IMG/VR virus record: IMGVR_UViG_3300045973_000169
Location: 142,639-206,638 of that record
DNA: 64,000 nt
Direction: 5' to 3' (one strand)
Part shown: piece after piece, positions 45,510 to 62,523 of the stretch
Layout of the letters: every line of letters starts with the position of its first letter
Position numbering within the stretch: the stretch's first letter is position 1
Position numbers and translations under genes: made by a program
The notes under the pieces: model-generated
Database searches by the model: none
Told to the model about the DNA's origin: nothing
The model's input: only the letters and a program-made list of their open reading frames with translations

Positions 45510-47378
45510 TTATTCATATGATGCATTTATTGTTAGAGGATATTTGGTCCTATTGTTAATAAGTGGACTTGCCAGTTCAACTTTATCTATTTGAATACTT
45601 TGTTCTTTATTTTCACTCTTTAATGATACTTCTGATATTGTAACCATTAAAGTTTCAGTATTATTAGGAGTCACGAGACAGTTATTTATTAAACCTTGAG
45701 TTATTATTGACTCATTAAAATAATCAATAATTGCTATATCATTTGGATAAGGACTAAATTTAATTTCTTCTATTATGAATGGGAAGCTAACTGAAGCTCC
45801 ACCACAAACTGATCCACCAGACCCAATCAATATAAAATTGATTAACTCTACCCAAGATGGATTGCTTTCACCATTTACAACTGCTCCACCATCTGGATAA
45901 AAATCGGAGTTGAATGTAAAATCAGCATCACCATTTATTATAGCTCCATCTTCTGAAGAAACTATAAATAATGCAAGTGGAGTTATCTCTGATATACCAG
46001 AAATAATAGCTCCACCTAAAGTATCATTAACCGATTCAAAGCTAAACTGAGTTTCAGAACTTACTACTGATCCACCAACTGCTGACACTATAAAACTATT
46101 TAGAAAGTCCGCACTGCCAGAAACTATTGTCCCACCAGAAGCTGATATACTAAAAGTAGCATTTGGGATTATAGTTGCTGTACCACCAGTTATCGATCCA
46201 CCAATAAATAATGGATTAAACTCAGCCTTAATAGATCCATTACTTCCTACTGTAGATCCACCAGATACAGCAACTGTAAACATTTGAATCCCTGACATTG
46301 CAATAGTTGCATTGCCTGAAATTACAACTCCACCATTCGCAATGATTGATAGGTTCTTGTTAACAGATATTGTAGAACTACCAGATACTACGGCACCACC
46401 AATTGAGACCTCAGAGAAACCTTCAAGTTCTAATGAATCACCAGAGGCAACACATCCACCAGCTCCGACTAAGTTAAAATTCTTAGTAAAATTAACATTA
46501 GTTATACCACCAGTAATACTTCCACCTGAAGGTGTTACTGTAAAGTTATTTATTTTGGTAATTGATGCAGTTGCACCAATGACTGCTCCACCAGTTTGGA
46601 TTAAGGAAGTATTAAAGTTAGGGATTATATCATAAGAACTATTTGAGGAAATAGCTCCACCTACTGATATAACATTCTTTCCTGATATGATAGGAGAAGA
46701 TCCACCTAGTATTGCTCCATTTGCTGGAGTAATAGAAAGTGTCTTAGTAAAAGATATATCAGCAGAGCCACTACTTATAGCTCCAGATGTTGGAGTTACA
46801 TTCAGATTATGTGCAAAACTGATAGTAGGTGAACCACTAGATACAGATCCACCAGAAGATACAAGAGTTGTATTAAAGTTTGCTGCTAGAGTAGATAGAC
46901 CTCCAGTTAAGCATCCTCCGGTCCCAGTAATTGGGAATGTATAAGTATAAGCAAAAGTAGAGGTTCCGCTAGCAACTGCTCCTCTATCAGGTAAGAATAT
47001 AAAGTTAAGTGGAATTAAGATTGCTGCTTGACCACCTACTAAAGCTCCACCAGATGCTGTGAATGAGAAGTTTTGGTTAAACGTTATTGTAGCATTCCCA
47101 CCAATAGTTGTCCCACCAGTTGGAATTATTGTTGAATTATAATTTGGAGTAAAAGATGCACTGCCACTACAAACACTACCATTCGTAGAAGAAATTGATA
47201 TAGTTGAAGTCTGAGCAATAGTAGAGTTCCCACCAACGATAGAGCCACTATCCCCTATTATTGAGAACGTAGCATTACCAGTAATAATGGCGGACCCACC
47301 AAAGACAGATCCGCCATTTCCGTTGACAGTTAAATTACTACTAGTTGCTTGATTGGTTAATGCAAGCAGTAGTGACAT
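45510..47378 (-). CDS. Repeat protein with ~24 tandem 20-24 aa 'xxGG-x-(V/I)-x-G' units (622 aa)
   Basis: Counted by eye, e.g. PTGGTTIGGNATITFNQNFSFT / ASGGALVGGQAAILIPLNFIFL / SSGGSVSSGSPTISFAHNLNVT. Confidence 0.75.
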   Translation of the reverse strand: MSLLLALTNQATSSNLTVNGNGGSVFGGSAIITGNATFSIIGDSGSIVGGNSTIAQTSTISISSTNGSVCSGSASFTPNYNSTIIPTGGTTIGGNATITFNQNFSFTASGGALVGGQAAILIPLNFIFLPDRGAVASGTSTFAYTYTFPITGTGGCLTGGLSTLAANFNTTLVSSGGSVSSGSPTISFAHNLNVTPTSGAISSGSADISFTKTLSITPANGAILGGSSPIISGKNVISVGGAISSNSSYDIIPNFNTSLIQTGGAVIGATASITKINNFTVTPSGGSITGGITNVNFTKNFNLVGAGGCVASGDSLELEGFSEVSIGGAVVSGSSTISVNKNLSIIANGGVVISGNATIAMSGIQMFTVAVSGGSTVGSNGSIKAEFNPLFIGGSITGGTATIIPNATFSISASGGTIVSGSADFLNSFIVSAVGGSVVSSETQFSFESVNDTLGGAIISGISEITPLALFIVSSEDGAIINGDADFTFNSDFYPDGGAVVNGESNPSWVELINFILIGSGGSVCGGASVSFPFIIEEIKFSPYPNDIAIIDYFNESIITQGLINNCLVTPNNTETLMVTISEVSLKSENKEQSIQIDKVELASPLINNRTKYPLTINASYE

Positions 47379-47383
47379 TTATC

Positions 47384-48841
47384 TTATACCCACTTACCAT
47401 CGAAAGTAACTATATAAGTAATGAGTCCAGTTGTACCAGAAAAGATAGTACCGGCTAAAAATTTAGCTACTATTGCAATATATTCTCCAGGCATTACTGC
47501 AATTGGTACAGTGAAAGGCATATAGATAGTAGGGTTAGTTGCTCCAATAGCAGCAGTAGCAGCAAATGTATCCAGACCTAATGCTATACGTCTTGGAGCC
47601 TTAGTTGGTGTATTAATATTTTCAGTTGTTGCTAATGATAAAGCACTATGACCATATGCTAATGAATAAGCAATTACTCCTGGTCCGCCTGTTAAAGCTG
47701 CAGTAACCATTCCTTGTATTTTAACCCCAGATATTAATAAAACTTTCGCTGGGACTGTAGCCGTTGGTGTGGTATTTACGAATGAACATAAAATACCATC
47801 TGTCCCAGCGGCTAAAGTTGGCTGAATAGTAAACTGTCCACCTAAACCAGTATAAACTGAAGTTGTGTTTGTTAATACTGCTCCTGCCCCCAATACCATA
47901 CTGTTTGAAAAATAAGCTGTAGAACCTGTTGCCTGCCCAGTTTGTCCTTGAGTTAAACTTTTCCCTGCAATAGATGCTAACTCGTTTTGAGATAATCCTA
48001 ATCCAATAGAATCTTGACATCCGATACAAACATATCCTACTTTAATTATATTAGCTAATGAAGGGACTCCGTTATTATATGTTCTAATAGAGAATGGTTG
48101 TGTTCCAGCATTCATCGGCATACCAGCATCACCTGCTGAACTTATAGTAGCTACACATATCCCATTAATATAGTATAATACTCTATCATTTTCGCAAATA
48201 ATTTTATACTTATGCATTACTCCAGGAGCAGGTATAGTATAAGCTTGACCAGTCACATAGTGGGTAGGGGAAATAGTCATTGACTGTTCAGTCCCCTGAT
48301 TTGATAAAACTGCCTGTAGTGTTCCACCAGAAGTTGAATATCTAAAGAATGCCCCATCAGTTGGAGCAGTAGTTGAAATGCACTGGAAAAATCCAGCCTC
48401 TGTTACACAGTTAGCTTGATGTGTTTGTGTGTGTAACATTTCCCAAACAGCAAATGTTGATAAGTCACATAGGAAAGGGAAGAAAGCAACGGTAGTCATC
48501 CTAGCAACGTTAGTAGAAGCTGTAGCTAAACCAGCATTTAAGTTAATTGTATTTGTCCCTGCAACTATCGTCATAGTTCCTGTAGGCAATACCCAATCAT
48601 TTGAAAATGGTAATGATCCACTAAAAATTGAGTTTAAAAGAATAATAGGCGACCCTACTCCTAATCTTCCTTGAGCAGAGGTTCTAATATCATTAACTAT
48701 TCTTCCTACTGGATCTGTTGGTTCTGCTAATTCCCCAGACAGCATAGCATACCCAGCCTGAGTAGATACTGTTGGTAAATTAGTTTTTATATTATTATAA
48801 GTATCAAGATTAGTTCCTGTTACTAGTACGTCCATTGCCAT
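47384..48841 (-). CDS. Hypothetical virion protein with concanavalin A-like (lectin) domain (485 aa)
   Basis: 'DGAFFRY...MHKYKIICENDRVLYYINGICVATI' matches the H.Y.I......V.fyiDG pattern of ConA-like beta-sandwiches. Confidence 0.55.
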   Translation of the reverse strand: MAMDVLVTGTNLDTYNNIKTNLPTVSTQAGYAMLSGELAEPTDPVGRIVNDIRTSAQGRLGVGSPIILLNSIFSGSLPFSNDWVLPTGTMTIVAGTNTINLNAGLATASTNVARMTTVAFFPFLCDLSTFAVWEMLHTQTHQANCVTEAGFFQCISTTAPTDGAFFRYSTSGGTLQAVLSNQGTEQSMTISPTHYVTGQAYTIPAPGVMHKYKIICENDRVLYYINGICVATISSAGDAGMPMNAGTQPFSIRTYNNGVPSLANIIKVGYVCIGCQDSIGLGLSQNELASIAGKSLTQGQTGQATGSTAYFSNSMVLGAGAVLTNTTSVYTGLGGQFTIQPTLAAGTDGILCSFVNTTPTATVPAKVLLISGVKIQGMVTAALTGGPGVIAYSLAYGHSALSLATTENINTPTKAPRRIALGLDTFAATAAIGATNPTIYMPFTVPIAVMPGEYIAIVAKFLAGTIFSGTTGLITYIVTFDGKWV

Positions 48842-48853
48842 AAAAATCTCCCT

Positions 48854-49147
48854 TTAGTCAGCCCAAACCCAACGTAATGTAAACTGTCCAGTTAGTTTTT
48901 GAGATGATCTTGCATATATGGTAAAGCCATTCCCAGCAGTTGGTGTCCCACATGTAAGTCCACAGAATGCTGATAAGTATCTATGGTCATTAGCAGTATG
49001 ATCAACTGAAGTGTCATCAGCCATAATAAAAGCCTCAGCTTTACTTGTTGCTGAAATGGTTGCTTCTCCAGTAACAGTAACCTGGGCCTCATTTGACCCA
49101 GGCGCTGTACCAAAATTAATTGTTGTAGTCCCTTGTGATGATGCCAT
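48854..49147 (-). CDS. Small hypothetical virion protein (97 aa)
   Basis: Compact beta-rich ORF with RBS and 'DHTANDH' motif, closely spaced (12 nt) with the 485-aa gene. Confidence 0.65.
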   Translation of the reverse strand: MASSQGTTTINFGTAPGSNEAQVTVTGEATISATSKAEAFIMADDTSVDHTANDHRYLSAFCGLTCGTPTAGNGFTIYARSSQKLTGQFTLRWVWAD

Positions 49148-49156
49148 TAGTTATCC

Positions 49157-49603
49157 TTAAGCTGCTGGAACGCCCCAAGACATTTGGAACTTAGGAGTAA
49201 TCTTATATGTATCGCCGTTGTTAGCAGGAGTAAAAGGACCAGAAGCTTTCTCAGCCCAAATAAGAATCCCATCAGCATCAACTACATAATATCCATAGAT
49301 ATCTTTAGCGGTAGATGTAAGAGGCCCAGTAAATGTAAATGTCTGTTGTGCATACACTGCATCTGAAGGATCATTAGCTGGAGTAACTGTCCAAGAACCA
49401 GCAGTTAAAGTTATAGCTGCATATCCTGGGCCTGCTGCTTCTGCTGCATTATAAGCTGCTGCTGTATCTCCACCGTTTGGGTTAGGAGTAATATTAGTTG
49501 TATAAAGCTTTAATGTTAAGTTATTCCCACCAACAGGTTGTGATTTATTAAAGTAAGATTTTAGGATTTGATCTGCACCTAAATCAGATAGTACTAATGC
49601 CAT
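49157..49603 (-). CDS. Small beta-rich virion protein, family member D (148 aa)
   Basis: 'LKLYT...EAAGPGYAAITLT..SW...QTFTFTG...IYGYYV...GDTYKITP' is a widespread phage pattern; AGGAG RBS. Confidence 0.7.
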   Translation of the reverse strand: MALVLSDLGADQILKSYFNKSQPVGGNNLTLKLYTTNITPNPNGGDTAAAYNAAEAAGPGYAAITLTAGSWTVTPANDPSDAVYAQQTFTFTGPLTSTAKDIYGYYVVDADGILIWAEKASGPFTPANNGDTYKITPKFQMSWGVPAA

Positions 49604-49614
49604 TGTATTGCTCC

Positions 49615-50571
49615 TTATTTAGATACTGATAAAAGAAAAATCTTTAACGTATCATTGTTTATTTTATAATAAAAATTAATATCTCTCTTTTGGTCTAAGA
49701 TCATATCTATTCTTTTGATTTTAATCTTATCCATTAATTCTTGTGGAGATTTTATTGGTCTATTAAACTTAATTGTTATTGGATTATATTTAACGTTATT
49801 AAACGTTACATTATCTGGAATAGTTTTTACTATTCTCATTGGATTCTGTAATTGATCTAGTATATTCCCAGGGGGAACAGTTAAACTAGTTGACTCTGGA
49901 GTAAGTGTATTATATTTACTTGTTTCAAAAGTTGTCTTATATATAGAAGTAAGCCCACTCGCCTTAAATACATCAATAGAGATAGAGTCTCCAATATCAA
50001 AACTCCCGGAGAATGAGACTTTAAGTTCTCCAAGATCTACTTCTTGTAATTGTTGATATGTGAATTCTCCTACATAAATAGCGCCTTTAGTCACATCTAT
50101 TCTGTTTCCAGATAATATATCAATAACAAATGTATCGTTAGTGTTCCCAGTATATGAACTTACAATTTCTAATGTTCCACTAGCAGAAGCACTTCTTAAA
50201 TATATAGGTTCTGATACAGTTACAGATGATATAAACCTAGAAGTGTCATCTCCAGGAAAGATAGAGATATAATGTTGTCGTTCAGGGACTAATGATGAAG
50301 TTGGCTTAATAAATAATTGGTTACCATTAAGAGTATAATTAAATTGATATTGGATAAACTCATCTGGACTATTATCAAGACTATTTGAAGAAGTATCTAA
50401 TATAGCAAGATCTGGACCTGTCCATAAGCCTGTAGATATAGTATAAAGACTAATGCCATTCTTTACTGTGAATGGGTCTATTGGGCTATCAAACTCAATC
50501 AAAAAAGTTGAATCTAGTGGAAGGTTGATGCTTCCATCTACAGGTGTCATATTAAGTACAGAAAGACTCAT
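49615..50571 (-). CDS. Ig-like (Big_5/SbsA-type) domain protein (318 aa)
   Basis: Two 'V....P.dg..n.......i.i.F..pi' starts: 'VLNMTPVDGSINLPLDSTFLIEFDSPI' and 'IVKTIPDNVTFNNVKYNPITIKFNRPI'. Confidence 0.7.
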   Translation of the reverse strand: MSLSVLNMTPVDGSINLPLDSTFLIEFDSPIDPFTVKNGISLYTISTGLWTGPDLAILDTSSNSLDNSPDEFIQYQFNYTLNGNQLFIKPTSSLVPERQHYISIFPGDDTSRFISSVTVSEPIYLRSASASGTLEIVSSYTGNTNDTFVIDILSGNRIDVTKGAIYVGEFTYQQLQEVDLGELKVSFSGSFDIGDSISIDVFKASGLTSIYKTTFETSKYNTLTPESTSLTVPPGNILDQLQNPMRIVKTIPDNVTFNNVKYNPITIKFNRPIKSPQELMDKIKIKRIDMILDQKRDINFYYKINNDTLKIFLLSVSK

Positions 50572-50658: not shown

Positions 50659-51114
50659 TTAAGATGATAAAGGAATGGTTGCTAGAACAGTTGCTGCAGG
50701 GAAGGAAATTTTACCACCGCCGTTAGCTGTCTGTCCTGTCCCGCTATTAGCTGCAGACTGGTCATCAGTACTTAGAAGACTTGCTCCTACAATTGCATTA
50801 GCTGAGTTAACCCAAATACAGCAATACTTTGCTGTTAAAGCATTCGCTGATCCATCTTGAGTCCAAGCAACCTCTGCAGATGTTCTAATTTCTCTTGTAT
50901 TCCCATTTAGGGCCGATATAACAGGAACGGTCTTAGTAGCCCTTGTGTAACCATATTGTGTTGCTAACTCACCTTTAAATCCTGCTGCTGTAAAAGTATC
51001 AGAACCAGATGGTGCTGCTACTGATCCATCATGTAATGTAGCGAAGTAAAAATATGCTGCTGCTGATGTTGCTTGTAAATCTCTAAATCCTGTTGATGCT
51101 GTAAAATCTGCCAT
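50659..51114 (-). CDS. Small beta-rich virion protein, family member C (151 aa)
   Basis: 'GELATQYGYTRAT...VAWT...AKYCCIW...GGKISFPA' parallels 'E..G.GY...' and the C-terminus of 49157-49603. Confidence 0.7.
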   Translation of the reverse strand: MADFTASTGFRDLQATSAAAYFYFATLHDGSVAAPSGSDTFTAAGFKGELATQYGYTRATKTVPVISALNGNTREIRTSAEVAWTQDGSANALTAKYCCIWVNSANAIVGASLLSTDDQSAANSGTGQTANGGGKISFPAATVLATIPLSS

Positions 51115-51126
51115 TTGAATGACTCC

Positions 51127-51756
51127 TTATATTATGTTGCTAAATTTATATGGTTCTCCAGTTATCCTTCTTAAATCTAATGGTTTCCCATCTGGGGCCC
51201 TTATTGCATTTATTATTTTCATCCCCTCTAACGTTGGAGGACTTACTAGTCTAGGCGTAGATAGAACTGTTGATGGTAAAAATAAACCACTTACTTTACC
51301 TGTTACATCTAATGAAACTATTGTTTGTTGTGATCTTACTGTTGACGGAGATAAAGTTCCATTTACTAATGTTATTACACCATTTGTTCCAATTATTTTA
51401 ACTGCATTAACAGTTATTAATGATTGAATAGTAGATATATAAATTAGTCCATCTGAAATTATTACATTACCAGAAATATTAATCTGTTCAATGGTCTGTA
51501 AACTATCAACTGAAGAAATATTTAAGTATCCACTTTGTACTCCAGATACTTCTGCCTCAACTGTTATTAAGTTAGGAGCATATACAGCTCTATTATTCCC
51601 TAATACAGTAGGGATACTTAGGCTTGCACTATTAAGATCAATTGTATATTGTCTTGTTTGTAAAGGTTCTACATTTCCATCTTCATCAATAGAGAAAAAT
51701 TTAATCTCTGTGTCTTGAGTTAGAATTATAGGACCAGTATATAGGATAGTAGCCAT
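51127..51756 (-). CDS. Repeat protein beginning with the C-terminal half of an Fn3-associated/chitobiase-C-like domain (209 aa)
   Basis: Starts 'LYTGPIILTQDTEIKFFSIDEDGNVEPLQTRQYTI', followed by ~5 repeats related to those of 55622-58063. Confidence 0.7.
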   Translation of the reverse strand: MATILYTGPIILTQDTEIKFFSIDEDGNVEPLQTRQYTIDLNSASLSIPTVLGNNRAVYAPNLITVEAEVSGVQSGYLNISSVDSLQTIEQINISGNVIISDGLIYISTIQSLITVNAVKIIGTNGVITLVNGTLSPSTVRSQQTIVSLDVTGKVSGLFLPSTVLSTPRLVSPPTLEGMKIINAIRAPDGKPLDLRRITGEPYKFSNII

Positions 51757-51785
51757 TTATTCCCATCACTAGATAGTAAGATATT

Positions 51786-52178
51786 TTAGTTTACTGTTGC
51801 TACACTTATAGTAAATTCTGCTGGAGTATAATACGTTCCTGCAGACAAAGAAGTATTCCCTGTATCAATTAGCTTGATAACTCCATCTGTTGCTCCACCC
51901 ATTGTTTTTAATATAATTGTATTAGCGATACCGCTAATGTTACACAATATCTGTGTTCCAGCTAAAACTTTAATACTAGACCCAGAGGTCAACTGGAATG
52001 AAGCTGGCGTTACAGTTCTAGATGCTAGTACATTGGTGATCATACTAGCTTGCAAGACTCCATTGCCATCAATTGGCTGTGATATCATATTACAATAAAG
52101 AATTGTTGTAGTAGTATCTATAATATTTTGTAGCATTAAATCAATAACTGCTTTATTTATTGCTTTTGATGTTGCCAT
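51786..52178 (-). CDS. Small beta-rich virion protein, family member B (130 aa)
   Basis: Similar size and pattern to the adjacent 131-aa gene (L..I....T.I..C..QP; C-terminal P.F.I); AGGAG RBS. Confidence 0.7.
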   Translation of the reverse strand: MATSKAINKAVIDLMLQNIIDTTTTILYCNMISQPIDGNGVLQASMITNVLASRTVTPASFQLTSGSSIKVLAGTQILCNISGIANTIILKTMGGATDGVIKLIDTGNTSLSAGTYYTPAEFTISVATVN

Positions 52179-52193
52179 AGAAAAACTCCTTAA

Positions 52194-52589
52194 TTAGATC
52201 GGATCTGCTATTACTAAATTAAATGCTGGACTATCCCATATCTGTGAGGTCGTTACTGATTGTCCCGAAGGGAAGTTAACACTTGTCCCAGCTAGAATAT
52301 TAACTCCATCTGTAAGTACAACATAGGTAATAATCCCATTCCCTGATGGTGTATTCCCTGTTGTTGCATTAATTGTTAATGTAGCCTTATTTGAATTACC
52401 TGTATCATCAAATGGCCCAGTATAATTTGCAGAAGTTAAACCTGTCTTATTAATTAATACTCTTCCAGAGGTTGCTAAGTCTGCATAATTAGTTGGTTGT
52501 TGATTACAAAAAGCTATCCTTGTTGCTGAGTTCTTAATTACATTCAATGCTGGATAAAGCACTAATGCATGATTAATATATTTTGCCAT
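52194..52589 (-). CDS. Small beta-rich virion protein, family member A (131 aa)
   Basis: 'ALNVIKNSATRIAFCNQQPTNY...WDSPAFNLVIADP' is a widespread phage pattern; AAGGA RBS. Confidence 0.7.
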   Translation of the reverse strand: MAKYINHALVLYPALNVIKNSATRIAFCNQQPTNYADLATSGRVLINKTGLTSANYTGPFDDTGNSNKATLTINATTGNTPSGNGIITYVVLTDGVNILAGTSVNFPSGQSVTTSQIWDSPAFNLVIADPI

Positions 52590-52601
52590 AATATTTCCTT
52601 T

Positions 52602-55600
52602 TTATTGTAATGGTATTGCTATACTATCAATACTTACTCCAGTATCATAACCATCACCTGTAGAATATGCTGTAATTGTTACTAAACCATTTGTTACAGA
52701 AGATGGTGTTGTAAATGTATATACTCCAGAATATGAACATCCAAACCATGAAATACCATTCACATCGACTGATGCAATTACCGAATCAACTCCTTCATCA
52801 GTTACCGTATCAGCATATCCACCACTTACTGCTATTATGAAGTCTTGCCCTCCACTTATATTTAATGTCTTACTCATTGAGACACTTGTATAATTTCCCG
52901 TACTAAAATTACCTAATGGGAGTGGATTTCCACCTGCCCCTTCTAAAATAGTCCAACCAGCGCTCCCTAGATCTTGCCTTAATCCAGGAGGATAGATCTC
53001 GATTAAAGGTAGATCAGTAGTAATATTTAAATCTTCTATAAATAATGATCCACCCGTTAATACTGCAGAGACATCAGGAATAGATATATTAGTGTCTAAA
53101 TTGCCAAGAGTGAATATATTTGGATTAATTAGATTAATAGATTTTATATAAGTATCTATATTAAAACTGTCTATTTTAATAGGCATTTTAATTGGGACTG
53201 AGATATTATCTATTGTTAATTGGCTAACAGTCGTACTCGCACATATCTCAATTAAATGACTACCTGAAGAAATAGGACATGAGAAAGTTTGGTTTATATT
53301 CCTATTTAAATCAACTGGAGCATTATAGACAACTCCATCGACTCTTATAAATATTGGGAATGTATTTAAAGTCCAGTATCCCTTTAATAAAATAGAGATA
53401 TTCCCTTCCCCAGTTATTATTGTTTTAGATAACACTGCTCTCCAGTTAGAGAAACTATTATTTGCTACTAGTGAATATGTACCATTTATTGGAGTAGTAT
53501 TACTGACAGTCCACATATCAAAAGTACTTAAATAGTTTCTATTTGTCACCCAACCATCTAAAGTTCCACTTTCGAAGTTAGTTATAGTACATACATAAGA
53601 AGGATCTGTGTTGTCTAACTCTATCTGTGCATTCATATTATCAATAGTGATTATTCCGCCACCAAATCCTATAATAAAATCAATATCATTAGCCTCTACT
53701 ATAACTGAGTTAAAATCAAATTCTGCTTCAGTCATTGAAATATTAGCTAATAAATTATCGGCATTTATCCACCATAATGTAGCAGGAGTCATTGAGATAT
53801 TAAACAATATGTCTTTCACAGCTATAACTGGGAATCCAGCAGAGGTCATACTGATATTAAGTTTTACAGACTTAGCAGCAACAACATTTGGAGCGGATCC
53901 ATCAGTTGAATAATATATTGCAGATGGCTTATAAGTTGATAAAGTGACTGGTGTCCCTTGAGTGATAGTCATACTTGGGAGTGGGTAAGGATCAGTATGT
54001 AAATAGTTAATCGCCTTTCTTACTGCTGCCCCAGCATTAGCTAACCCATAAGTAAACCATTTTTTATCACCTGGGATACTTCCAGTCGTAGGTTTGTAAT
54101 TGACAGATGTATCTCCTGTTGAGAATATACAATCAAGTACTTGTGCATTTGTTAAACTTGGATTAGCTGACCAAACTAAAGCAGCGATAGCTGCTGCATT
54201 TGGAGATGCAAATGATGTTCCACTCCCACCAGTAGCAACATATCCTGTATAGAAGTTAGCATTTACTGTCCCGCTTTGCTTTGCAGCATAAGACATCTTT
54301 ACTTCCCACATTGACTGCGGTACTCTATCGTTCGGAATAATCATGGTATAGTCTTCAACATATCCGGTACATTTAATAGAGCGAGAAACTAAATTATCAG
54401 ATGGTTCACTCATTAATCTTACATACTTACTCCCGGCAGTGAATATAACGCTGAATGTTTTAGTAGTAACTAGCGCGGCATTATTTAATGGGGCGAGAGA
54501 CCAATGTGATTCTGATTCTGCTCCTATTAAAACATGTGAACCATAATTTGAGTTACCTACTAATACGCCATTTATTGTACTCCCAACCTGAACAGCATGA
54601 CGTCCTGCTAATATATTCATTAAATTTTTTTCATCATTACCAGATGCAACGAATCCAAGTTTGCCATTATTCCACATTTGATCCCAACATAATTCTAATG
54701 TTCTATCATAAAACTCAACTTCATTAAAATTATTCATATCTCCTAATGGATCACTATCATAGAAGAAAATATCAAATGTTGTTTTCCCACCAGAATATGT
54801 CGCAGAAGTAGCTAACCCATATACTGGTCTTAAAGGAGAGTTCGTATTTGTACATAAGACTCCCATATTAGTGAATGTAGCAATAGCCCCAACTATTTTA
54901 AACCTAGTTGAATATAATATATTTTCTTGCAATACAGGATATTTCTGTCCATAAATTACAGTACCAAAACTCATAGAGAGTATCTTAATAGATGGATTAG
55001 TTGAGGCTGCTACTAATGCCACTGTCCCAGCAATTGAATTCCCAAAATGACCATCTGTAGAATTAGCTTTTATAGGGAATAATGTACACCCACTTGCAAT
55101 GCCTTCGATAGGGTACCCATTTGCCACAATTGATGAACACATAGTCCCATGTTGTTCATTGTCTGTTAGCATCTCTTGATGGTTAGCGGTTCCCCATAAC
55201 CATGAAGGATACCCCCATGTAGAATGTATTTTACCAGCAAACCCTGGATGTAAAGCATCTATCCCAGAGTCAAATATCCCAATAAGTAAATTTGGGTCAC
55301 CTTTAGTTATGGTCCATGCTATATCAATTCCCATACGCTCATAGGCAGTTCTCTGTTGCATATTATATAATGGAGCATCAGATACTATCCCAATTGTACA
55401 ATTTTTATGAGGTAATACGAATCCAGCAAAGTTAACATGAGGAGAGTCATCAAGTTCATCCATGAATTCAAGAGAAGCATATTCGTCTATTTCAACGATA
55501 TAGATATCTAAGTTAGTCAATTTCTCTATTAACTTAGCTCCATGTTTTTCTAATATGAAATGGAATTCGCTAAGGTCATGACCAGGAGCCATGTGTATAT

Positions 55601-55631
55601 TCATTTGTCTAGTAGCCATAATTAAACCCAA
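52602..55631 (-). CDS. Subtilisin-family (S8) serine protease with prodomain and C-terminal repeat/jelly-roll modules (1009 aa; start may be 55619)
   Basis: Catalytic triad IFD121SG, QH161GT, GTS473FASP; oxyanion ASGN332; 'AAIAALVWSANPSLTNAQV'. Confidence 0.9.
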   Translation of the reverse strand: MGLIMATRQMNIHMAPGHDLSEFHFILEKHGAKLIEKLTNLDIYIVEIDEYASLEFMDELDDSPHVNFAGFVLPHKNCTIGIVSDAPLYNMQQRTAYERMGIDIAWTITKGDPNLLIGIFDSGIDALHPGFAGKIHSTWGYPSWLWGTANHQEMLTDNEQHGTMCSSIVANGYPIEGIASGCTLFPIKANSTDGHFGNSIAGTVALVAASTNPSIKILSMSFGTVIYGQKYPVLQENILYSTRFKIVGAIATFTNMGVLCTNTNSPLRPVYGLATSATYSGGKTTFDIFFYDSDPLGDMNNFNEVEFYDRTLELCWDQMWNNGKLGFVASGNDEKNLMNILAGRHAVQVGSTINGVLVGNSNYGSHVLIGAESESHWSLAPLNNAALVTTKTFSVIFTAGSKYVRLMSEPSDNLVSRSIKCTGYVEDYTMIIPNDRVPQSMWEVKMSYAAKQSGTVNANFYTGYVATGGSGTSFASPNAAAIAALVWSANPSLTNAQVLDCIFSTGDTSVNYKPTTGSIPGDKKWFTYGLANAGAAVRKAINYLHTDPYPLPSMTITQGTPVTLSTYKPSAIYYSTDGSAPNVVAAKSVKLNISMTSAGFPVIAVKDILFNISMTPATLWWINADNLLANISMTEAEFDFNSVIVEANDIDFIIGFGGGIITIDNMNAQIELDNTDPSYVCTITNFESGTLDGWVTNRNYLSTFDMWTVSNTTPINGTYSLVANNSFSNWRAVLSKTIITGEGNISILLKGYWTLNTFPIFIRVDGVVYNAPVDLNRNINQTFSCPISSGSHLIEICASTTVSQLTIDNISVPIKMPIKIDSFNIDTYIKSINLINPNIFTLGNLDTNISIPDVSAVLTGGSLFIEDLNITTDLPLIEIYPPGLRQDLGSAGWTILEGAGGNPLPLGNFSTGNYTSVSMSKTLNISGGQDFIIAVSGGYADTVTDEGVDSVIASVDVNGISWFGCSYSGVYTFTTPSSVTNGLVTITAYSTGDGYDTGVSIDSIAIPLQ

Positions 55632-58063
55632 TGTACCTGAGCAGATCCATAAATCTGGATAGTGTTACCATTGACTACAGGGAATGAAGCAACAGGGTCC
55701 CCAGTAATTGAAGCTCCCGAACCACCATAGCCACCATTTCCTTCCCATGCAGAAGAACCTTCTCCACCGCCACCGGTAACACCAGGGGTTACTAATGTTC
55801 CAGTAATAGGAGCGATGGTCCAACCTGTCCCACCAGCTCCATCAACAGGGCCAAAGCCGCCAGCTCCGCCGCCACCAGCAAATGCTATTGTTGTTCCATT
55901 AAGAGTCAGATAAGAATTTTCCCCTGCTGTACCCTCAGTGCTATCTGCCCCTGTCCCATCTCCGCCTGTTATATAGTCTATAACAACAGTTTTAGAACTA
56001 GTAAATGTATATGGTCCACTAGTTAGTATATAAGCAGTTGTAGTTAATGCTGTATCAGTTGCGCTCCATGGAGATGTCAATGTAAAGCCAGCCCCAGTAG
56101 CCCTTATCTTAAAGTGATACGTGGTAGATATGTCTAGTCCAGTAAACGTATGTCTTGTGGTTGCCTGTGAAGGTATATTTATAATTCCTAATTCATAACT
56201 AGTTGTCTTACCATACTCGATATCATAACCAGTAGCATAAGTAATTGCATCCCAGTTTAAGTCAATCTCAGTTGCTCTTGTTGCCATTTCTCCAGCGAAA
56301 CCAAGAGTAGGGGCAGATAATGTTCCTCTAGTTAAAACATTAAATGTCTTAGGAGACCCATTAACTAAGGCTCCACATGTTACTGTAGTTAAGTTGCTTG
56401 TTGATGATAGACCTCTACATTTTAAAGTATCTCCATTTGCTATTGTTTTATTTCCACTAGCACTTGTAACCCAAGGGCCACCAGAGATCGATATTTGTGA
56501 TTGTGTTAAATAGGCACCTACATTAATGCTTGTATTTAAACCACTGATAGTTACTGTATTAGATTCAACATATGAGTTCTGTAATGCATCAGTGATATCT
56601 GAGAATACTATTGCATCAGGTGCATTGTCTTTACTGCCAGTATTAACTTTAGTTATATTCCAAGTATCACTTACTCCATTAATGGTTAATGTGAATGTAC
56701 GTGCTCCGACTGTTGTTTCAGAACAACTAAATTCTACTTGGTCACCAGCATTTAATGTTAAATTAGTAGATGGGTTGAGTAAGTTACTTGGGATACCGCC
56801 ATTTACATAGACAAAGCCTTGAGCATTATTAGCTAGTCCAGTCCTTGTAACGACTCCAGTTACAGTAGTGTCAATCCCAGTAATTAAAACTTTATTTGAA
56901 TGTACATCATCTGCATACCAAGCATTAGCTATATCAGTAAATGAGAATGCATTAGGAACTATATCTGCCATACCAGATACTATAATATCGAATTGTCCAA
57001 CAGTTATAGCACTATTATAAGAAGACGGGCTCAATAGTCCATTAGTAACTGATGTAATCGTAGGAGCAAATACGCCTCTTAAGGTTGGTGTCACTGAAGA
57101 AATAGACATTAGTCCAGAACAGAAACCTACTAAAGAAGGAGCATTAATAGTTCTAGTTACATTACCATAAGTAATACTTAGTGGTCCGTTAGTTACGGAT
57201 GGACCATAAGCTGCAATGTTTATTTGAGTTACTGCTTGTAAACTATTAACAGAAGATATATTTAATACTCCTGACATTACGCCTACAATAGAAGGAGCGA
57301 ATATACTTCTTATGCCTCCTACTGAAGAAATACCAAATAATCCATTATCAACTCCAGGGATATGACCAACAATCTTAGAGGCATAAATAGATGATGTATA
57401 TGTTACCCGAGATAAACTTAATAGCCCAGAACATTTACCTAAAATAGATGGAGCATTAATTGTATAGGGAGAATTTAAGGCAGATAAACTTAATAGTCCA
57501 TTTATTTTTTCAATTACTAGATCAGTACAATCCCAAACAATAGCCCAGTCAGGCCATCCAAGGTCTAACAATGCCTGTATCGCATTACGTGTAGTATCAT
57601 TAGGAAGAGTTCCATTTGAACTTTTACCTCTTACCCAAACACGTTCCCCAAGGTTAGCTCTCTGTTCTGCTGTAAGAGGATTGTTTATTACAACTGTTAG
57701 GTTACCATTAGAATCAGGAGCATTGCCATTTACAGACTTAACTACGCCTATTACTTGGCTAGCATTATGAATATGAGTAGAGGGAGTAAATGTTGTTGGT
57801 TTACCTTGGACAGATGCCCAATCAGTATTAACTGTAATCCCTTGTGTAGTATTGTTAATATCCATTATATCGGATATAGAATGTTTGTGGAATGAAGGTG
57901 GGAAGAAAGTAGGGACCTCTGCTATATTAGACCATTTAACATTTGAGGTTGCTAAAGTAATAGTGGTCTGGTCTGGCGTAAAGTCAGGTGCAGTCTTCTG
58001 TAATATCACTTGTAATTCTTGTAAAGTTGATAGTCCTGTTGGAACCCTATAAGACTTAGCCAT
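55622..58063 (-). CDS. Fibre-like repeat protein with HxH motifs, ~7 tandem repeats, Ig-like and fibronectin type III domains, Gly-rich end (813 aa from the revised start)
   Basis: Start moved from 58096 to 58063 (GGAGG RBS before MAKSYR). Two 'W....xxPT.F.PS.HxH' units, 'VKSVNGNAPDSNGN', and FN3 'IDLNWDAITYATGYDIEY...TYHFKIRA'. Confidence 0.75.
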   Translation of the reverse strand: MAKSYRVPTGLSTLQELQVILQKTAPDFTPDQTTITLATSNVKWSNIAEVPTFFPPSFHKHSISDIMDINNTTQGITVNTDWASVQGKPTTFTPSTHIHNASQVIGVVKSVNGNAPDSNGNLTVVINNPLTAEQRANLGERVWVRGKSSNGTLPNDTTRNAIQALLDLGWPDWAIVWDCTDLVIEKINGLLSLSALNSPYTINAPSILGKCSGLLSLSRVTYTSSIYASKIVGHIPGVDNGLFGISSVGGIRSIFAPSIVGVMSGVLNISSVNSLQAVTQINIAAYGPSVTNGPLSITYGNVTRTINAPSLVGFCSGLMSISSVTPTLRGVFAPTITSVTNGLLSPSSYNSAITVGQFDIIVSGMADIVPNAFSFTDIANAWYADDVHSNKVLITGIDTTVTGVVTRTGLANNAQGFVYVNGGIPSNLLNPSTNLTLNAGDQVEFSCSETTVGARTFTLTINGVSDTWNITKVNTGSKDNAPDAIVFSDITDALQNSYVESNTVTISGLNTSINVGAYLTQSQISISGGPWVTSASGNKTIANGDTLKCRGLSSTSNLTTVTCGALVNGSPKTFNVLTRGTLSAPTLGFAGEMATRATEIDLNWDAITYATGYDIEYGKTTSYELGIINIPSQATTRHTFTGLDISTTYHFKIRATGAGFTLTSPWSATDTALTTTAYILTSGPYTFTSSKTVVIDYITGGDGTGADSTEGTAGENSYLTLNGTTIAFAGGGGAGGFGPVDGAGGTGWTIAPITGTLVTPGVTGGGGEGSSAWEGNGGYGGSGASITGDPVASFPVVNGNTIQIYGSAQVHWV

Positions 58064-58115: not shown

Positions 58116-58146
58116 AAAAAGAAAGGGTCCTCTTTCAAGGACCCTT
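58116..58146 (-). terminator. Rho-independent terminator after the major capsid gene
   Basis: Minus strand AAGGGTCCT-TGAAAG-AGGACCCTT followed by TCTTTTT. Confidence 0.85.
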
Positions 58147-58175
58147 CTATTACATTATAGTATTTAAAATATTTC

Positions 58176-59372
58176 TTATACCATTTTGTCGCTAACGGTA
58201 AGATCTTCTGACCACTTAACATCAGCAGCCTGTGCATTAACGTTTGTAACACCGAATTCAGCGAAACGGTTAGGTACAACTTTAACATTTTTCACGACAC
58301 CAACTCCACGACCCTCGTTCAGGATTGCAATACCATACTTCTCACGAAGCTTGATATTCTGGATATCACGCTCTGGATCACTCCATTGATGCTGATTAAT
58401 TTCTTCAGCTTGAACGATAGCTCCTGCATTACCTGAGTCTACAAAGTAGATAGAGGTTAATTTATTGACCGGATCAAACGGAACCTGTGGGGAAACCATC
58501 ACGCGGAATGGAATCTGTGCCCAAGCAGGAAGAACCGGAGTACCTTTAAAGTCGACAGGTGAAGTTTCACCAGGACGTGCACCTTTTCCAGCCATACCTT
58601 GACCTTCGAAGAAGGAATCACGGGAAACACCTTGAACGTCATATCCACCAATAAGTGGTCCGCCGCCATGTCTCCATGCGAATACTTTTAAGAACGGGTC
58701 TTTTGCCCAGATTGCCCAAGACAGAGGATGCATAACAATCGTGTCAGGAGCATAACCTTCTACAAGCATCGAAGCATAGATATCGAAGAAGTCTTCTGAT
58801 CCAAAGCTGTAGTTAAGTGCCCCAGTACCATCTTTACCAGACAGAGGACGTCCAATAACCGAAGCTGCTGGATTCTTGTTGTCTGCTAAAGTCAGACCCT
58901 GTTTTTCGAATAAACGGAAACAGATGTGATTTTTTCTACGAGCAAAAGCTTTACCAGCAGCTTTCAGCCATAGTGCGATAACGTCATACTGAGACTGATC
59001 AATCATTTCTTCAGTAAGGGAGAGTTTGATACCGTATTTACGGATGTCAACACGGATAACAGATCCTCCACCCATTGTGATTTCTTCAGTTCCGTATTCA
59101 GCACCAGGAGCGATCTCATCGATCATTTCCATTGCGCCTTCAGCAGGAAGAGTAATATAAATACCCTCTTTCTGAGAAATTTTTGTAAATAGTTGGTTTG
59201 CGATCAGAAGAGGTTCAGAAGCTTGACGAACGACCTCACTAATTGCGATTGGCAGATACTTAGAAAGATCACCATGATTTAAGATGTCTCTAAGTTTTAG
59301 ACTTTCTTTATTAGCATCAGTAAGCTTTAGCTCCTGACCAATTGCTAATAGTTGTTTTTCTAATTCACTCAT
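58176..59372 (-). CDS. Major capsid protein (HK97 fold, 398 aa)
   Basis: 'ISEVVRQASEP', 'EIAPGAEY', 'IRKYGIKLSLTEEMIDQSQYDVI...AAGKAFAR', 'IKLREKYGIAILN'; strong GGAGG RBS, terminator downstream. Confidence 0.9.
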   Translation of the reverse strand: MSELEKQLLAIGQELKLTDANKESLKLRDILNHGDLSKYLPIAISEVVRQASEPLLIANQLFTKISQKEGIYITLPAEGAMEMIDEIAPGAEYGTEEITMGGGSVIRVDIRKYGIKLSLTEEMIDQSQYDVIALWLKAAGKAFARRKNHICFRLFEKQGLTLADNKNPAASVIGRPLSGKDGTGALNYSFGSEDFFDIYASMLVEGYAPDTIVMHPLSWAIWAKDPFLKVFAWRHGGGPLIGGYDVQGVSRDSFFEGQGMAGKGARPGETSPVDFKGTPVLPAWAQIPFRVMVSPQVPFDPVNKLTSIYFVDSGNAGAIVQAEEINQHQWSDPERDIQNIKLREKYGIAILNEGRGVGVVKNVKVVPNRFAEFGVTNVNAQAADVKWSEDLTVSDKMV

Positions 59373-60627: not shown

Positions 60628-62523
60628 TTATACTCTAGAAAATGCTCTTCGTAGAGCTGAAACTATTTCTGCATCAGAGAGTGCTTTTTCTTCTTTTTGT
60701 TCGTCAACAATCTTAATATCGGAACTTGCAGAAGTGTCACTATCGTCTAATGCATCCTGTAGTGTGGGGTCGTTTACGGATTTAATATCCTCTTTAGTGT
60801 TATTAACGTCCTGTACTTTAAACTTAGCTTTTAGCTGTCTAAAGTCACTAACTTGTCCTACTAATACATTGTATGGATGAGAAAGTAATTTAGCTCTTTC
60901 TTCTTCTACACTATCAGTAAGTAATCCTAAAGTTTGTTTTAAATCAATGATTTCATCTACTTTAGATTGTCTAATCTGAACATTAAGATCACGATTAAGC
61001 TCATCAAGTAGAGTTACTTCTTCTTTTGCTTCTTGTAATTCATCTTGTAGTGAAACAAGATTATCTAATCCAGATAGTTGCTCTGTAGTAGCTACGCCTT
61101 GTCCTTTACCACTTAAGTAAGAACCGATACTTGCATCTAATGCTTCACCAACGAATTTAGAATCTAGTCCAATAACCATATCAAAGATACGAGTAACAGG
61201 AGATTTACCTTCATCATCAGTTAGTTTAGTAGGGTCAAGAGATTCTACCATAGTTTTTAATTCAGTGATAACTTCATCAATACTTCTTACAGTTTGATCA
61301 GTACCTTCTGCATCAGCAATCTTTACTTCTTCTTTTACTTCCTTCTCAAAGTTAGCTTCAATTCCGAGTTTCTTAGCAGCTTTACCAATTGATGATTGAG
61401 CTTTAATAACTTCAGCAGGAGTAAGATCTTCTGCACAGTCTAATAGTTCAATAGCAAGTTTTACATTAAGTTCATCATGTAAAGGAAATCTACGTTTAAT
61501 CTCATCTTCTGTCTTCTGAACAATAGCAAACTGGGAATCCTTCATGTCATCTTCAAGAGTTAACTTACCTTGATCTTCTTCAGTAAGCTCTGCATCTTGA
61601 ATCTTAATTTCCTTTAGTTTGTCTCCAAATTCATTGACATAAGATAAAGAAGTTACTTTCTTGTCTTCTGCCTTACGTGCCATTATAGCCTCCCTGTTAA
61701 CTATCTTACAAATGTTATCGCAACACACGATTGTTTTAGTTTCATCTGCAAGTTTAAAAAAGTCTCTCTTATTGATAAAATCCATTTCAATTAAGAGGTT
61801 TTCTACTTCATACTCAATTTCTTCAACTATACCATCATGTATCTTAGTAATCTTACCATGTGGATCAGCAGCTTTCTTATTTCTTAGGAATGATAGTTCT
61901 TCATACTCTAAGTCTTCAGCTAGCATGAAACCACCAGCTCTATGATGAAAGTGGTCACATATACCATCAGCTACTTGGTCTTGTAAACAATGGGAACAAA
62001 TAAGTCTCTTAGGATCTGCACCAATAGAAACAGTTGCAAACTCTTTAGCTAGTACTCGTCTAATACCTTCTTCATCATTAAGCATACCTACAGTTTCAAC
62101 ATATCCAAGACCATTGAACTTACTATCTTTCCTTTGGTGCGGGATAAGAAGATCATTACACATAGAGATATACTCTTCTGTAGTTAAGTCTTCTAGTTTG
62201 TTAAATGCAGAAAATTTATTATAATAATCTGTTAGTTTATAATCGACAGCTATAATACTACCAAATCTCTTAGATACTTTAGGTCTATGATTTTCAATAA
62301 TAGGTTTAGGAGCTGGATGAATAAATGTACCGATATTATCTTTTACTGTATCATGACGATAAACTACAACATTACCATTAAGCATACCAAAATGAGAAGC
62401 ATCAATAGTAACAAGAAGTTCTTCTTTCTTTCTTACTCCATCTTCTAATCTAATAAGAGCTTGTTCTGATAAATTAAAATTATGTACTTCTCGTATTTTT
62501 AATACACTATTATGAAATATCAT
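60628..62523 (-). CDS. Prohead protease fused to acidic coiled-coil scaffold (631 aa)
   Basis: 'KPIIENH79' and 'TVS166IG' fit the His/Ser of herpes/HK97-type head proteases. Adjacent 'CSHC...CDH' cluster; acidic helical C-terminus. Confidence 0.8.
   Translation of the reverse strand: MIFHNSVLKIREVHNFNLSEQALIRLEDGVRKKEELLVTIDASHFGMLNGNVVVYRHDTVKDNIGTFIHPAPKPIIENHRPKVSKRFGSIIAVDYKLTDYYNKFSAFNKLEDLTTEEYISMCNDLLIPHQRKDSKFNGLGYVETVGMLNDEEGIRRVLAKEFATVSIGADPKRLICSHCLQDQVADGICDHFHHRAGGFMLAEDLEYEELSFLRNKKAADPHGKITKIHDGIVEEIEYEVENLLIEMDFINKRDFFKLADETKTIVCCDNICKIVNREAIMARKAEDKKVTSLSYVNEFGDKLKEIKIQDAELTEEDQGKLTLEDDMKDSQFAIVQKTEDEIKRRFPLHDELNVKLAIELLDCAEDLTPAEVIKAQSSIGKAAKKLGIEANFEKEVKEEVKIADAEGTDQTVRSIDEVITELKTMVESLDPTKLTDDEGKSPVTRIFDMVIGLDSKFVGEALDASIGSYLSGKGQGVATTEQLSGLDNLVSLQDELQEAKEEVTLLDELNRDLNVQIRQSKVDEIIDLKQTLGLLTDSVEEERAKLLSHPYNVLVGQVSDFRQLKAKFKVQDVNNTKEDIKSVNDPTLQDALDDSDTSASSDIKIVDEQKEEKALSDAEIVSALRRAFSRV

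What the first reader, a model, noticed from the sequence alone, without database searches (positions are those of the whole stretch)
52602..55631. Subtilisin-family protease encoded among virion genes
Seen: full D121/H161/S473 triad, oxyanion N332, an N-terminal prodomain-like segment, two ~80-aa insertions in the catalytic domain, no obvious signal peptide, and C-terminal repeats and jelly-roll-like modules. A separate prohead protease exists, so this is not the head maturation enzyme. Inference: a particle-displayed protease for S-layer, biofilm or mucus proteins, or for appendage maturation.
Basis: partly seen in the sequence, partly recalled or inferred. Interest (0 to 1): 0.6.

Follow-up and report, generated by a model that had tools for sequence, protein, structure and literature searches.

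The report
Phage subtilisin protease in a fibre cassette
A 206-kb pond phage carries an intact, very rare subtilisin-type protease inside an optional fibre-gene cassette just behind its capsid gene, so its particles probably carry a protein-cutting enzyme, though nothing here proves that.

Summary
Window 52602-55631 (-) is one ORF, with the real start most likely the ATG at 55619 (1005 aa). It encodes a Peptidase_S8 subtilase (Pfam 6.8e-23) with D121/H161/N332/S473, a propeptide-like N-terminus, no signal peptide, two insertions and a beta-rich C-terminal half.

The genome is a complete 206,638-bp jumbo myophage from a pond metagenome. It belongs to the Bacillus phage 0305phi8-36 capsid lineage and has its own prohead protease/scaffold gene.

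The S8 gene lies in a six-gene, about 7.5-kb cassette (50659-58063) between the major capsid gene and an Ig-like gene. That cassette is missing from the closest relatives. It starts with a tail-fibre-like 813-aa gene whose stop lies 2 nt before the S8 start.

Only two relatives share the insertions among 1.84 billion representative proteins, and both keep the catalytic residues.

Two precedents support a virion role. In 0305phi8-36 this same slot encodes virion proteins confirmed by mass spectrometry. In Agrobacterium jumbo phage Atu_ph07 a 1251-aa S8 protein next to fibre genes was detected in virions.

A virion-borne, fibre-linked protease acting on host surface proteins is the best reading (about 0.45). 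It is inferred, not shown. The C-terminal fold and the host are unresolved.

The parts
52602..55619 (-). S8 subtilase gene, 1005 aa from the ATG at 55619; the longest ORF starts at the TTG at 55631
   Evidence: the N-terminus aligns with P0005
55362..55619 (-). Propeptide-like N-terminal segment (about 90 aa) with no signal peptide
   Evidence: pLDDT 83-96 for P0002 residues 1-60. It aligns to the region of bacterial homologues that follows their hydrophobic N-terminus. Weak Fervidolysin_NPro-like hit, E 0.033.
54114..55292 (-). Peptidase_S8 catalytic domain. Codons: D121 at 55269-55271, H161 at 55149-55151, N332 at 54636-54638, S473 at 54213-54215 (TTG numbering)
54702..54950 (-). Insertion 1 (about 83 aa, beta-hairpin rich) between the SMSFG strand and the oxyanion Asn
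   Evidence: Occupancy below 30% in 57 homologues but about 0.9 in P0005 and P0115; pLDDT 53-72
54252..54428 (-). Insertion 2 (about 60-80 aa) just before the GTS serine motif
   Evidence: pLDDT below 50
53883..53978 (-). First half of a CHB_HEX_C_1 / Fn3_assoc-type domain
   Evidence: Profile positions 2-34 of 67; 25 bits on the isolated piece against a cut-off of 22; the same in P0005
53727..53864 (-). Three NISMT repeats at a 19-aa spacing
   Evidence: Read directly from the sequence
53184..53594 (-). Beta-rich module A, possibly like a carbohydrate-binding jelly roll; fold unresolved
   Evidence: CBM_4_9 E 0.0085, below the cut-off; conserved in P0005; models unusable
52605..52985 (-). Beta-rich module B; fold unresolved and only weakly conserved in P0005
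55622..58063 (-). First gene of the cassette: an 813-aa fibre-like protein. It has an N-terminal tail-fibre motif region, about 26-aa repeats, an FN3 domain and a Gly-rich C-terminus. GGAGGA lies 7 nt before the ATG at 58063. Its TAA lies 2 nt before the S8 ATG.
   Evidence: PHROG tail, minor tail and tail fibre families, 2.5e-11 to 2e-7, on residues 44-142; fn3 1.4e-7
58122..58147 (-). Intrinsic-terminator-like hairpin (11 pairs plus a T run) between the capsid gene and the cassette
52194..52589 (-). Cassette gene p131, a small protein of a widespread phage family
   Evidence: ESM Atlas: feature score 0.96 and TM 0.80-0.86 to viral clusters, some carrying PF23140 Gp80; the HMM itself does not match
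51786..52178 (-). Cassette gene p130, unknown
51127..51756 (-). Cassette gene p209. It has the second half of a CHB_HEX_C_1 domain, repeats homologous to those of the 813-aa fibre-like protein, and a C-terminal AIRAPDG motif shared with the C-terminus of P0115.
   Evidence: Pfam profile positions 38-66 of 67; blastp 1.7e-7 to the fibre-like protein; Smith-Waterman z 4.5-4.7, 0 of 300 shuffles, against the P0115 C-terminus
50659..51114 (-). Cassette gene p151, unknown; last gene of the insert

Best explanation
The gene encodes a catalytically competent pro-subtilase (family S8) that the phage makes in the cytoplasm late in infection, as part of an optional fibre cassette. The proposed steps are these.
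1. The cassette is transcribed at a low level past the terminator that follows the capsid gene.
2. The protease is translated in step with the preceding fibre-like protein.
3. The propeptide folds the enzyme and keeps it quiet.
4. The enzyme joins the particle as a low-copy accessory component, held through the fibre-like protein and/or the 209-aa protein, which shares modules with both.
5. On contact with a host cell, the C-terminal beta-rich modules hold it on the envelope, and the protease cuts a proteinaceous surface layer to give the tail access.

Shown here: family membership, intact and conserved catalytic residues, no signal peptide, the accessory-cassette context, and the shared modules. 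Inferred: transcription and translation behaviour, virion incorporation, activity and substrate.
For: Family and fold. S8 family and fold with D/H/N/S in place.

Conservation. The catalytic residues and both insertions are kept in the only two relatives, at 32% and 23% identity. The three form one clade (support 0.99).

No secretion signal. All three lack the N-terminal hydrophobic segment seen in 52 of 60 aligned proteins.

Structural-module context. The gene lies in the late structural block between the capsid gene and the neck, sheath and tube genes.

Fibre link. The cassette begins with a protein that matches tail and tail-fibre PHROGs. That gene's stop is 2 nt from the S8 start.

Shared modules. 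The 209-aa protein shares repeats with the fibre-like protein (1.7e-7). It also looks like the C-terminal part of the single-chain relative P0115, which ties S8, p209 and the fibre-like protein together.

Accessory status. Relatives with 68-75% identical capsid proteins (L007, L008, L009) do not have the six genes in the slot after the capsid gene, and the closest one (L006, 89%) carries a different cargo there.

Precedent for the slot. In 0305phi8-36 the same slot after the capsid gene is an indel that encodes curly-fibre candidates and low-copy virion proteins found by mass spectrometry (PMC2147016).

Precedent for a virion S8. Atu_ph07 gp329 is a 1251-aa S8 protein two genes from a tail-fibre gene. 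It was detected in virions with 3 peptides (PMC6102473).

Precedent for a stand-alone virion enzyme. [quoted passage not shown]
Against: There are no proteomic, expression or activity data for this phage.

No recognisable virion-anchor domain was found in the S8 protein.

The C-terminal modules could not be folded, and their carbohydrate-binding assignment is below threshold.

The Atu_ph07 precedent is weak: 2% coverage from PEG-purified particles, and a protein related only at the level of the S8 fold (one search found no hit).

Every cultured-phage S8 that the sequence search recovered is a small enzyme in a replication or nucleotide-metabolism module, not a virion protein.

An accessory cassette could equally carry a non-structural cargo gene.

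The host, and therefore any substrate, is unknown.
Confidence: 0.45

Rival explanations
1. It is a soluble late protein rather than a virion part. It accumulates in the cytoplasm as a zymogen and is set free at lysis. There it degrades extracellular matrix, surface proteins or debris-bound receptors around the burst, helping progeny spread or avoid dead cells. Alternatively it acts on host proteins inside the cell.
For: The cassette is dispensable in relatives. It lies behind a terminator. No virion-anchor domain was found. All cultured-phage S8 enzymes recovered by sequence are non-structural. Having a propeptide but no signal peptide also fits release by lysis.
Against: Close coupling to a fibre-like gene and shared modules with cassette partners. 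The slot holds virion proteins in 0305phi8-36. Atu_ph07 gp329 was found in virions.
Confidence: 0.25
2. It is a morphogenetic protease for the accessory appendage. It trims the fibre-like protein, the 209-aa protein or the giant virion proteins during assembly. It may or may not stay in the particle.
For: It is co-encoded and probably co-translated with a fibre-like protein. The phage has several very large virion-module proteins of 1659-2533 aa. Phage fibres often need proteolytic maturation (general knowledge; the S74 chaperone-peptidases are one example).
Against: About 450 aa of extra, binding-like C-terminal modules are unnecessary for an assembly protease. Relatives that lack the cassette still keep the conserved structural genes in the fetched 21-kb locus, from terminase through sheath and tube; the giant ORFs lie outside that locus. 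No subtilase is known to me in this role (from memory).
Confidence: 0.15
3. The subtilase fold is used only as a binding or structural module of a fibre (a pseudo-enzyme or adhesin), or the gene is a passenger without function.
For: The cyanophage S-CAM1 'tail fiber protein' holds only a partial S8 match (profile positions 125-276) and no clear D/H motifs in the right order. So degenerate S8 modules in fibre genes appear to exist.
Against: All four catalytic residues, the GTS and HGT motif context and the propeptide are kept across three proteins that are only 23-32% identical.
Confidence: 0.08

Closest known systems
Secreted bacterial subtilases with an N-terminal propeptide (deseasin MCP-01 3VV3, thermitase 1THM, subtilisins; Armatimonadota S8 P0155)
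   Same: Same fold, the D-H-N-S catalytic set and a propeptide-like N-terminus.
   Different: This protein has no signal peptide. It has two insertions of about 60-83 aa shared by only three proteins. It carries about 450 aa of unrelated C-terminal modules and is encoded in a phage structural module.
Agrobacterium jumbo phage Atu_ph07 gp329 ('extracellular serine proteinase', 1251 aa)
   Same: A phage S8 protein of more than 1000 aa with C-terminal Ig-type modules, in a jumbo myophage, two genes from a tail-fibre gene. It was detected in the virion proteome with 3 peptides and 2.08% coverage (PMC6102473).
   Different: It is related only at the level of the S8 fold; tblastn found nothing even at E 0.1. 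Its S8 domain is compact and lacks the insertions. It has He_PIG domains instead of the modules seen here, and it belongs to a different phage lineage. Its function is equally untested.
The indel after the capsid gene in Bacillus phage 0305phi8-36 (orfs 126-134, curly-fibre candidates)
   Same: Same capsid lineage (29-35% identical capsid proteins). Same slot between the capsid gene and the gp136 homologue. It is an indel of several virion protein genes at once, confirmed by mass spectrometry.
   Different: No sequence similarity to gp129 or gp130, and no protease in that phage's slot.
Small S8 proteases of Bacillus Tsamsa-like siphophages (Thrax3, PBC2, Kirov) and of Moorella phage MTATph1
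   Same: Phage-encoded Peptidase_S8.
   Different: They are only about 290-330 aa with no extra modules, and they lie among replication and nucleotide-metabolism genes.
[quoted passage not shown]
   Same: The proposed way of working is the same: an enzyme carried on the particle that opens the host envelope. Gp255 is a separate polypeptide bound to the baseplate (PMC4870245).
   Different: Those enzymes cut glycans or peptidoglycan, whereas this one would cut protein. There is no beta-helix or trimeric spike signature. Incorporation is not shown here.
Prohead maturation proteases (HK97 gp4 / T4 gp21 type)
   Same: A serine protease encoded near head genes.
   Different: The fold and family differ. 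The phage has its own protease/scaffold gene of the 0305phi8-36 gp123 type at 60628-62523.

Membership tests
Peptidase S8 (subtilase) | Profile match above the curated threshold | tested here: met
   PF00082: 81.8 bits against a cut-off of 21.8, E 6.8e-23; six-frame search 3.3e-24
Peptidase S8 (subtilase) | Catalytic Asp, His and Ser in that order within DSG, HGT and GTS motifs, plus the oxyanion Asn | tested here: met
   D121, H161, N332, S473; the columns are conserved in 57-59 of 60 sequences
Peptidase S8 (subtilase) | Subtilisin alpha/beta fold | tested here: met
   AlphaFold2 core pLDDT mostly 80-97. Foldseek against the PDB gives E 1e-14 to 1e-11, with TM by target 0.68-0.85 among the first five matches, to deseasin, thermitase and subtilisins
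Peptidase S8 (subtilase) | N-terminal propeptide (I9 or fervidolysin type) acting as intramolecular chaperone and inhibitor | tested here: inconclusive
   Confident fold for residues 1-60. It aligns to the region before the catalytic domain in homologues. The Pfam Fervidolysin_NPro-like hit is only E 0.033. Processing cannot be tested.
Peptidase S8 (subtilase) | Proteolytic activity | not testable with these tools
   Needs expression and assay
Secreted bacterial pre-pro-subtilases | N-terminal signal peptide | tested here: not met
   Maximum 12-residue hydrophobicity 0.78, against 2.0 or more in 52 of 60 aligned proteins
Prohead maturation protease | Homology to HK97 gp4 / T4 gp21 / 0305phi8-36 gp123-type proteases, encoded between the portal and capsid genes | tested here: not met
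   This protein has the S8 fold instead. The gp123-type gene is a separate ORF at 60628-62523.
Virion-associated enzyme (fibre- or spike-borne depolymerase) | Encoded within the structural module next to fibre genes | tested here: met
Virion-associated enzyme (fibre- or spike-borne depolymerase) | Physical presence in the particle | not testable with these tools
   Metagenome-only phage seen in a single DNA run, with no RNA or proteome
Virion-associated enzyme (fibre- or spike-borne depolymerase) | Recognisable N-terminal particle-anchor domain or trimeric beta-helix | tested here: not met
   No such Pfam or PHROG hit. The N-terminus is a propeptide.
Tail-fibre chaperone peptidase S74 | C-terminal Peptidase_S74 domain | tested here: not met
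   No hit in the Pfam scans

The most novel reading that the evidence does not exclude
This would be a 'protein depolymerase' fibre. In this reading, a rare, insertion-bearing subtilase is mounted on a jumbo-phage particle through a split architecture. An ancestral single-chain protein (S8, then a CHB_HEX_C domain, then repeats, then a tail, as in P0115) has been interrupted. Its two parts (S8 and p209) now assemble with a fibre protein that shares the same repeats. The virion could then digest a proteinaceous host surface layer in the way tailspikes digest polysaccharide.
Probability: 0.3. Interest if true: 0.7.

Novelty: new variant of a known kind. Interest (0 to 1): 0.5.

Why it matters
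Characterised particle-borne phage enzymes cut sugars or peptidoglycan. A protease carried on a virion to breach protein layers such as S-layers, sheaths or pili has hardly been documented. The only trace I found is three peptides of an unrelated S8 protein in Atu_ph07 virions.

If this enzyme is on the particle and active, it would define a second chemical route for envelope penetration. It would also give a self-contained, cytoplasmically produced subtilase with a built-in targeting region.

The comparison with relatives also shows that the slot behind the capsid gene in the 0305phi8-36 lineage is an exchange site for whole sets of accessory genes.

Tried and rejected
Searches for relatives
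- tblastn of the whole protein against 50,697 phage records found nothing at 1e-5. At E 0.1 only small non-structural S8 enzymes appeared.
- The word-index search found only the protein itself plus generic S8 hits. The C-terminal part alone found nothing.
- Pattern scans of IMG/VR and GTDB genomes with the S8 alignments found no relatives.
- The capsid protein found no prophage or host genome, and in the metagenome collection it found only duplicates.
- Comparison with 0305phi8-36 gp129 and gp130 showed no homology.

C-terminal fold
- The full-length model has pLDDT below 50 after residue 534. The cropped model has mean pLDDT 32.7.
- The ESM Atlas feature and structure searches gave scores of at most 0.78 and TM of at most 0.39 by the query, so they yielded no usable lead.

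Complex prediction
- S8 residues 525-665 with the 209-aa protein scored 0.13 against a mark of 0.34. That is no verdict, and it is not evidence either way.

Context of relatives
- The neighbours of P0115 on L003 have no PHROG hits and no significant similarity to the cassette proteins.
- The contig that holds P0005 has no DNA on file, so its cassette could only be compared by gene lengths and Pfam flags.

Other checks
- Promoter-like sites are no more frequent than in shuffled sequence.
- The PF23140 (Gp80) HMM does not match the genome.
- P0155, the strongest hit of the word-index profile search after the query itself (628 aa, E 5.3e-29), is an ordinary chromosomal gene of an Armatimonadota bacterium.
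- Read laying was not used: the only run that holds the sequence is the probable source DNA run.
Full report
What is there

The window is the last 64 kb of a single 206,638-bp contig. It has 33.8% G+C, and its first 20 bases repeat at the end, which indicates a circular assembly. It is an IMG/VR virus record that CheckV rates 100% complete. It was found in one DNA run of a pond metagenome. It carries 19 tRNA genes, and about half of its ORFs have a Shine-Dalgarno-like motif.

Nearly all window genes lie on the minus strand and form the late structural block. Reading in the direction of transcription:
- portal (62801-64000);
- a 631-aa protein whose residues 32-195 match the protease part of Bacillus phage 0305phi8-36 gp123 protease/scaffold (7.5e-12);
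- a 394-aa protein;
- the major capsid protein (58176-59372), 29-35% identical to the capsid proteins of 0305phi8-36, KLEB27-3, WH1, Edson and Moorella phage MTATph1;
- further on, a tail sheath, three tube paralogues and three giant ORFs.

So this is a jumbo myophage of the 0305phi8-36 capsid lineage, and it has its own head-maturation protease.

The protease itself

The ORF at 52602-55631 (-) exists as described. Its likely start is the ATG at 55619, 2 nt after the TAA of the upstream gene. From that ATG the N-terminus aligns position for position with the relative P0005.

Family and fold:
- Pfam Peptidase_S8 matches at 6.8e-23 over residues 114-506.
- D121, H161, N332 and S473 (TTG numbering; D117, H157, N328, S469 from the ATG) sit in DSG, HGT, SGN and GTS motifs.
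- A 60-sequence alignment gave an AlphaFold2 model with high confidence for the first 60 residues and for the S8 core.
- Foldseek places deseasin MCP-01, thermitase and subtilisins first.

Insertions: two segments, P0002 215-297 and 389-447, are absent from 57 aligned homologues.

Signal peptide: the protein has no hydrophobic N-terminus, whereas 52 of the 60 aligned proteins have one. Their alignments to the query begin 40-80 residues in.

After the catalytic domain come:
- the first half of a CHB_HEX_C_1/Fn3_assoc-type domain;
- three NISMT repeats;
- two beta-rich modules, for which the only family hint is a sub-threshold CBM_4_9 match.
Their fold could not be resolved.

How rare it is

An exhaustive phmmer search of 1.84 billion representative proteins found 4871 S8 hits but only one full-length relative. 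That is P0005 (1035 aa, 5e-75, 33% identity), on a 4.9-kb metagenome contig. One further protein, P0115 (725 aa), shares both insertions.

The three form a clade in a tree of the S8 core (support 0.99). All keep the four catalytic residues. That conservation argues for selection on catalysis.

On its contig, P0005 is followed by ORFs of 129 and 133 aa and then by one with a weak CHB_HEX_C_1 flag. This echoes the order S8, p131, p130, p209 seen here. The DNA is not on file, so this rests on gene lengths and Pfam flags only.

The cassette

Relatives with 68-75% identical capsid proteins (L007, L008, L009) show the same gene order, but the six genes are missing from the slot right after the capsid gene. 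In L008 a small ORF and then the homologue of the 318-aa Big_5 protein (49615-50571) follow the capsid gene. In L009 the Big_5 homologue follows directly. The short L007 contig shows only the small ORF.

The six genes between them here are absent from that slot in those relatives. They are:
- the 813-aa fibre-like gene (55622-58063);
- the S8 gene;
- p131, p130, p209 and p151, running down to 50659.

The closest relative (L006, capsid protein 89% identical) carries yet another cargo in the slot. It includes an ORF of at least 355 aa that looks like a parallel beta-helix by eye but has no family hit.

A strong terminator-like hairpin separates the capsid gene from the cassette. The first cassette gene has a GGAGGA ribosome-binding site. 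Its N-terminal 100 residues match several PHROG tail, minor-tail and tail-fibre families.

The 209-aa protein links the components:
- Its repeats are homologous to those of the fibre-like protein (1.7e-7).
- Its first 40 residues are the second half of the CHB_HEX_C_1 domain whose first half sits in the S8 protein.
- Both its N-terminus and its C-terminal AIRAPDG motif match, in the same order, the C-terminal 170 residues of P0115. P0115 has the whole domain in one chain.

The simplest reading is that a P0115-type gene was interrupted by about 2.2 kb. That piece would encode the present S8 C-terminal modules plus p131 and p130. The direction of the event is not established. Either way the fused form in P0115 suggests, but does not prove, that S8 and p209 work together. 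A complex prediction gave no verdict.

Precedents

Hardies et al. (PMC2147016) describe the genes right after the capsid gene of 0305phi8-36 (orfs 126-134) as an indel relative to BtI1. It encodes curly-fibre candidates and six low-copy virion proteins. The GenBank record marks these proteins as found by mass spectrometry. So in this lineage the slot is a place where sets of virion proteins are swapped.

A fold search of viral models found large phage S8 proteins. Atu_ph07 gp329 has 1251 aa: an S8 domain followed by He_PIG Ig domains. It lies two genes from the tail-fibre gene gp327. It is listed in that phage's virion proteome with 3 peptides and 2.08% coverage (PMC6102473).

Cyanophage S-CAM1 has a 'tail fiber protein' with a partial S8 match.

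In contrast, the S8 genes of Bacillus Tsamsa-like phages and of Moorella phage MTATph1 are small and lie in replication or nucleotide-metabolism modules.

My ten searches of open-access full texts found no paper that describes a functionally characterised virion subtilase.

Interpretation

I commit to a low-copy, fibre-linked virion protease that acts on protein components of the host envelope (confidence 0.45). Family, intact catalytic set, missing signal peptide, cassette context and module sharing are shown. Incorporation, activity and substrate are inferred.

The rivals are:
- a soluble enzyme released at lysis (0.25);
- an assembly protease for the accessory appendage (0.15);
- a non-catalytic or passenger role (0.08).

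Verdict

This is a real and well-described feature. It is a member of a known enzyme family in an unusual, very rare form and context, with one weak proteomic precedent elsewhere. I rate it a new variant of a known kind, of moderate interest, and directly testable by expression and proteomics.

Noticed in passing
window 35698-36423 (-); paralogues at genome 129451-130203, 92129-92893 and 67853-68626: An HNH homing endonuclease (phrog_559, 2.9e-61) is present in four copies in the genome. In relative L006 a homologue sits between the portal and prohead-protease genes, which suggests mobile endonuclease genes moving within this phage group.
   Followed up: partly
window 16678-24279 (-), 24283-29262 (-), 29265-35111 (-): Three consecutive giant ORFs of 2533, 1659 and 1948 aa. 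The 2533-aa one ends in an SLT lytic transglycosylase domain (3.5e-20), so it is probably a tape-measure-type protein carrying a peptidoglycan-cutting enzyme. The other two have no family match.
   Followed up: partly
L006 6857-8301 (IMGVR_UViG_3300002026_001113; the same sequence as JFJP01042810.1): The closest relative (capsid protein 89% identical) has different genes in the slot after the capsid gene: a 105-aa ORF and an ORF of at least 355 aa. The latter looks like a parallel beta-helix by eye, but no Pfam or PHROG hit supports that. The slot appears to be an exchange site for accessory genes.
   Followed up: partly
window 52194-52589 (-): The 131-aa cassette protein has a confident ESM Atlas model (pLDDT 0.78). 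It lies next to several viral clusters of 118-142 aa, some of whose members carry Pfam PF23140 (Gp80), with feature score 0.96 and TM 0.80-0.86. The PF23140 HMM does not match it.
   Followed up: partly
window 58122-58147 (-): A strong intrinsic-terminator-like hairpin (11 pairs plus a T run) lies directly after the major capsid gene. This fits high capsid expression and low read-through into the accessory cassette.
   Followed up: no
window 45510-49603 (-): Four more genes (148, 97, 485 and 622 aa) between the Big_5 gene and the 469-aa gene have no counterpart in relative L008 and no family match. This is a second lineage-specific block in the same head-to-tail region.
   Followed up: no
window 4335-6182 (-) and 9514-12474 (-): A 615-aa protein has a near-threshold F5/8 type C (discoidin) match (27 bits against a cut-off of 28.2), and a 986-aa protein has an InlB B-repeat-like match. 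Both lie at the distal end of the structural block and are candidate receptor-binding proteins.
   Followed up: no
genome 23720-91311 (outside the window): 19 tRNA genes, 17 of them between 86.2 and 91.3 kb. The contig's first 20 bases equal its last 20, which indicates a circular assembly.
   Followed up: partly
L005 (Bacillus phage vB_BanS-Thrax3) 7914-8774; L004 (Moorella phage MTATph1) 5821-6807: Cultured phages encode small stand-alone S8 proteases (about 290-330 aa) among nucleotide-metabolism, RNA-repair and replication genes. This is a separate, uncharacterised use of subtilases by phages.
   Followed up: partly
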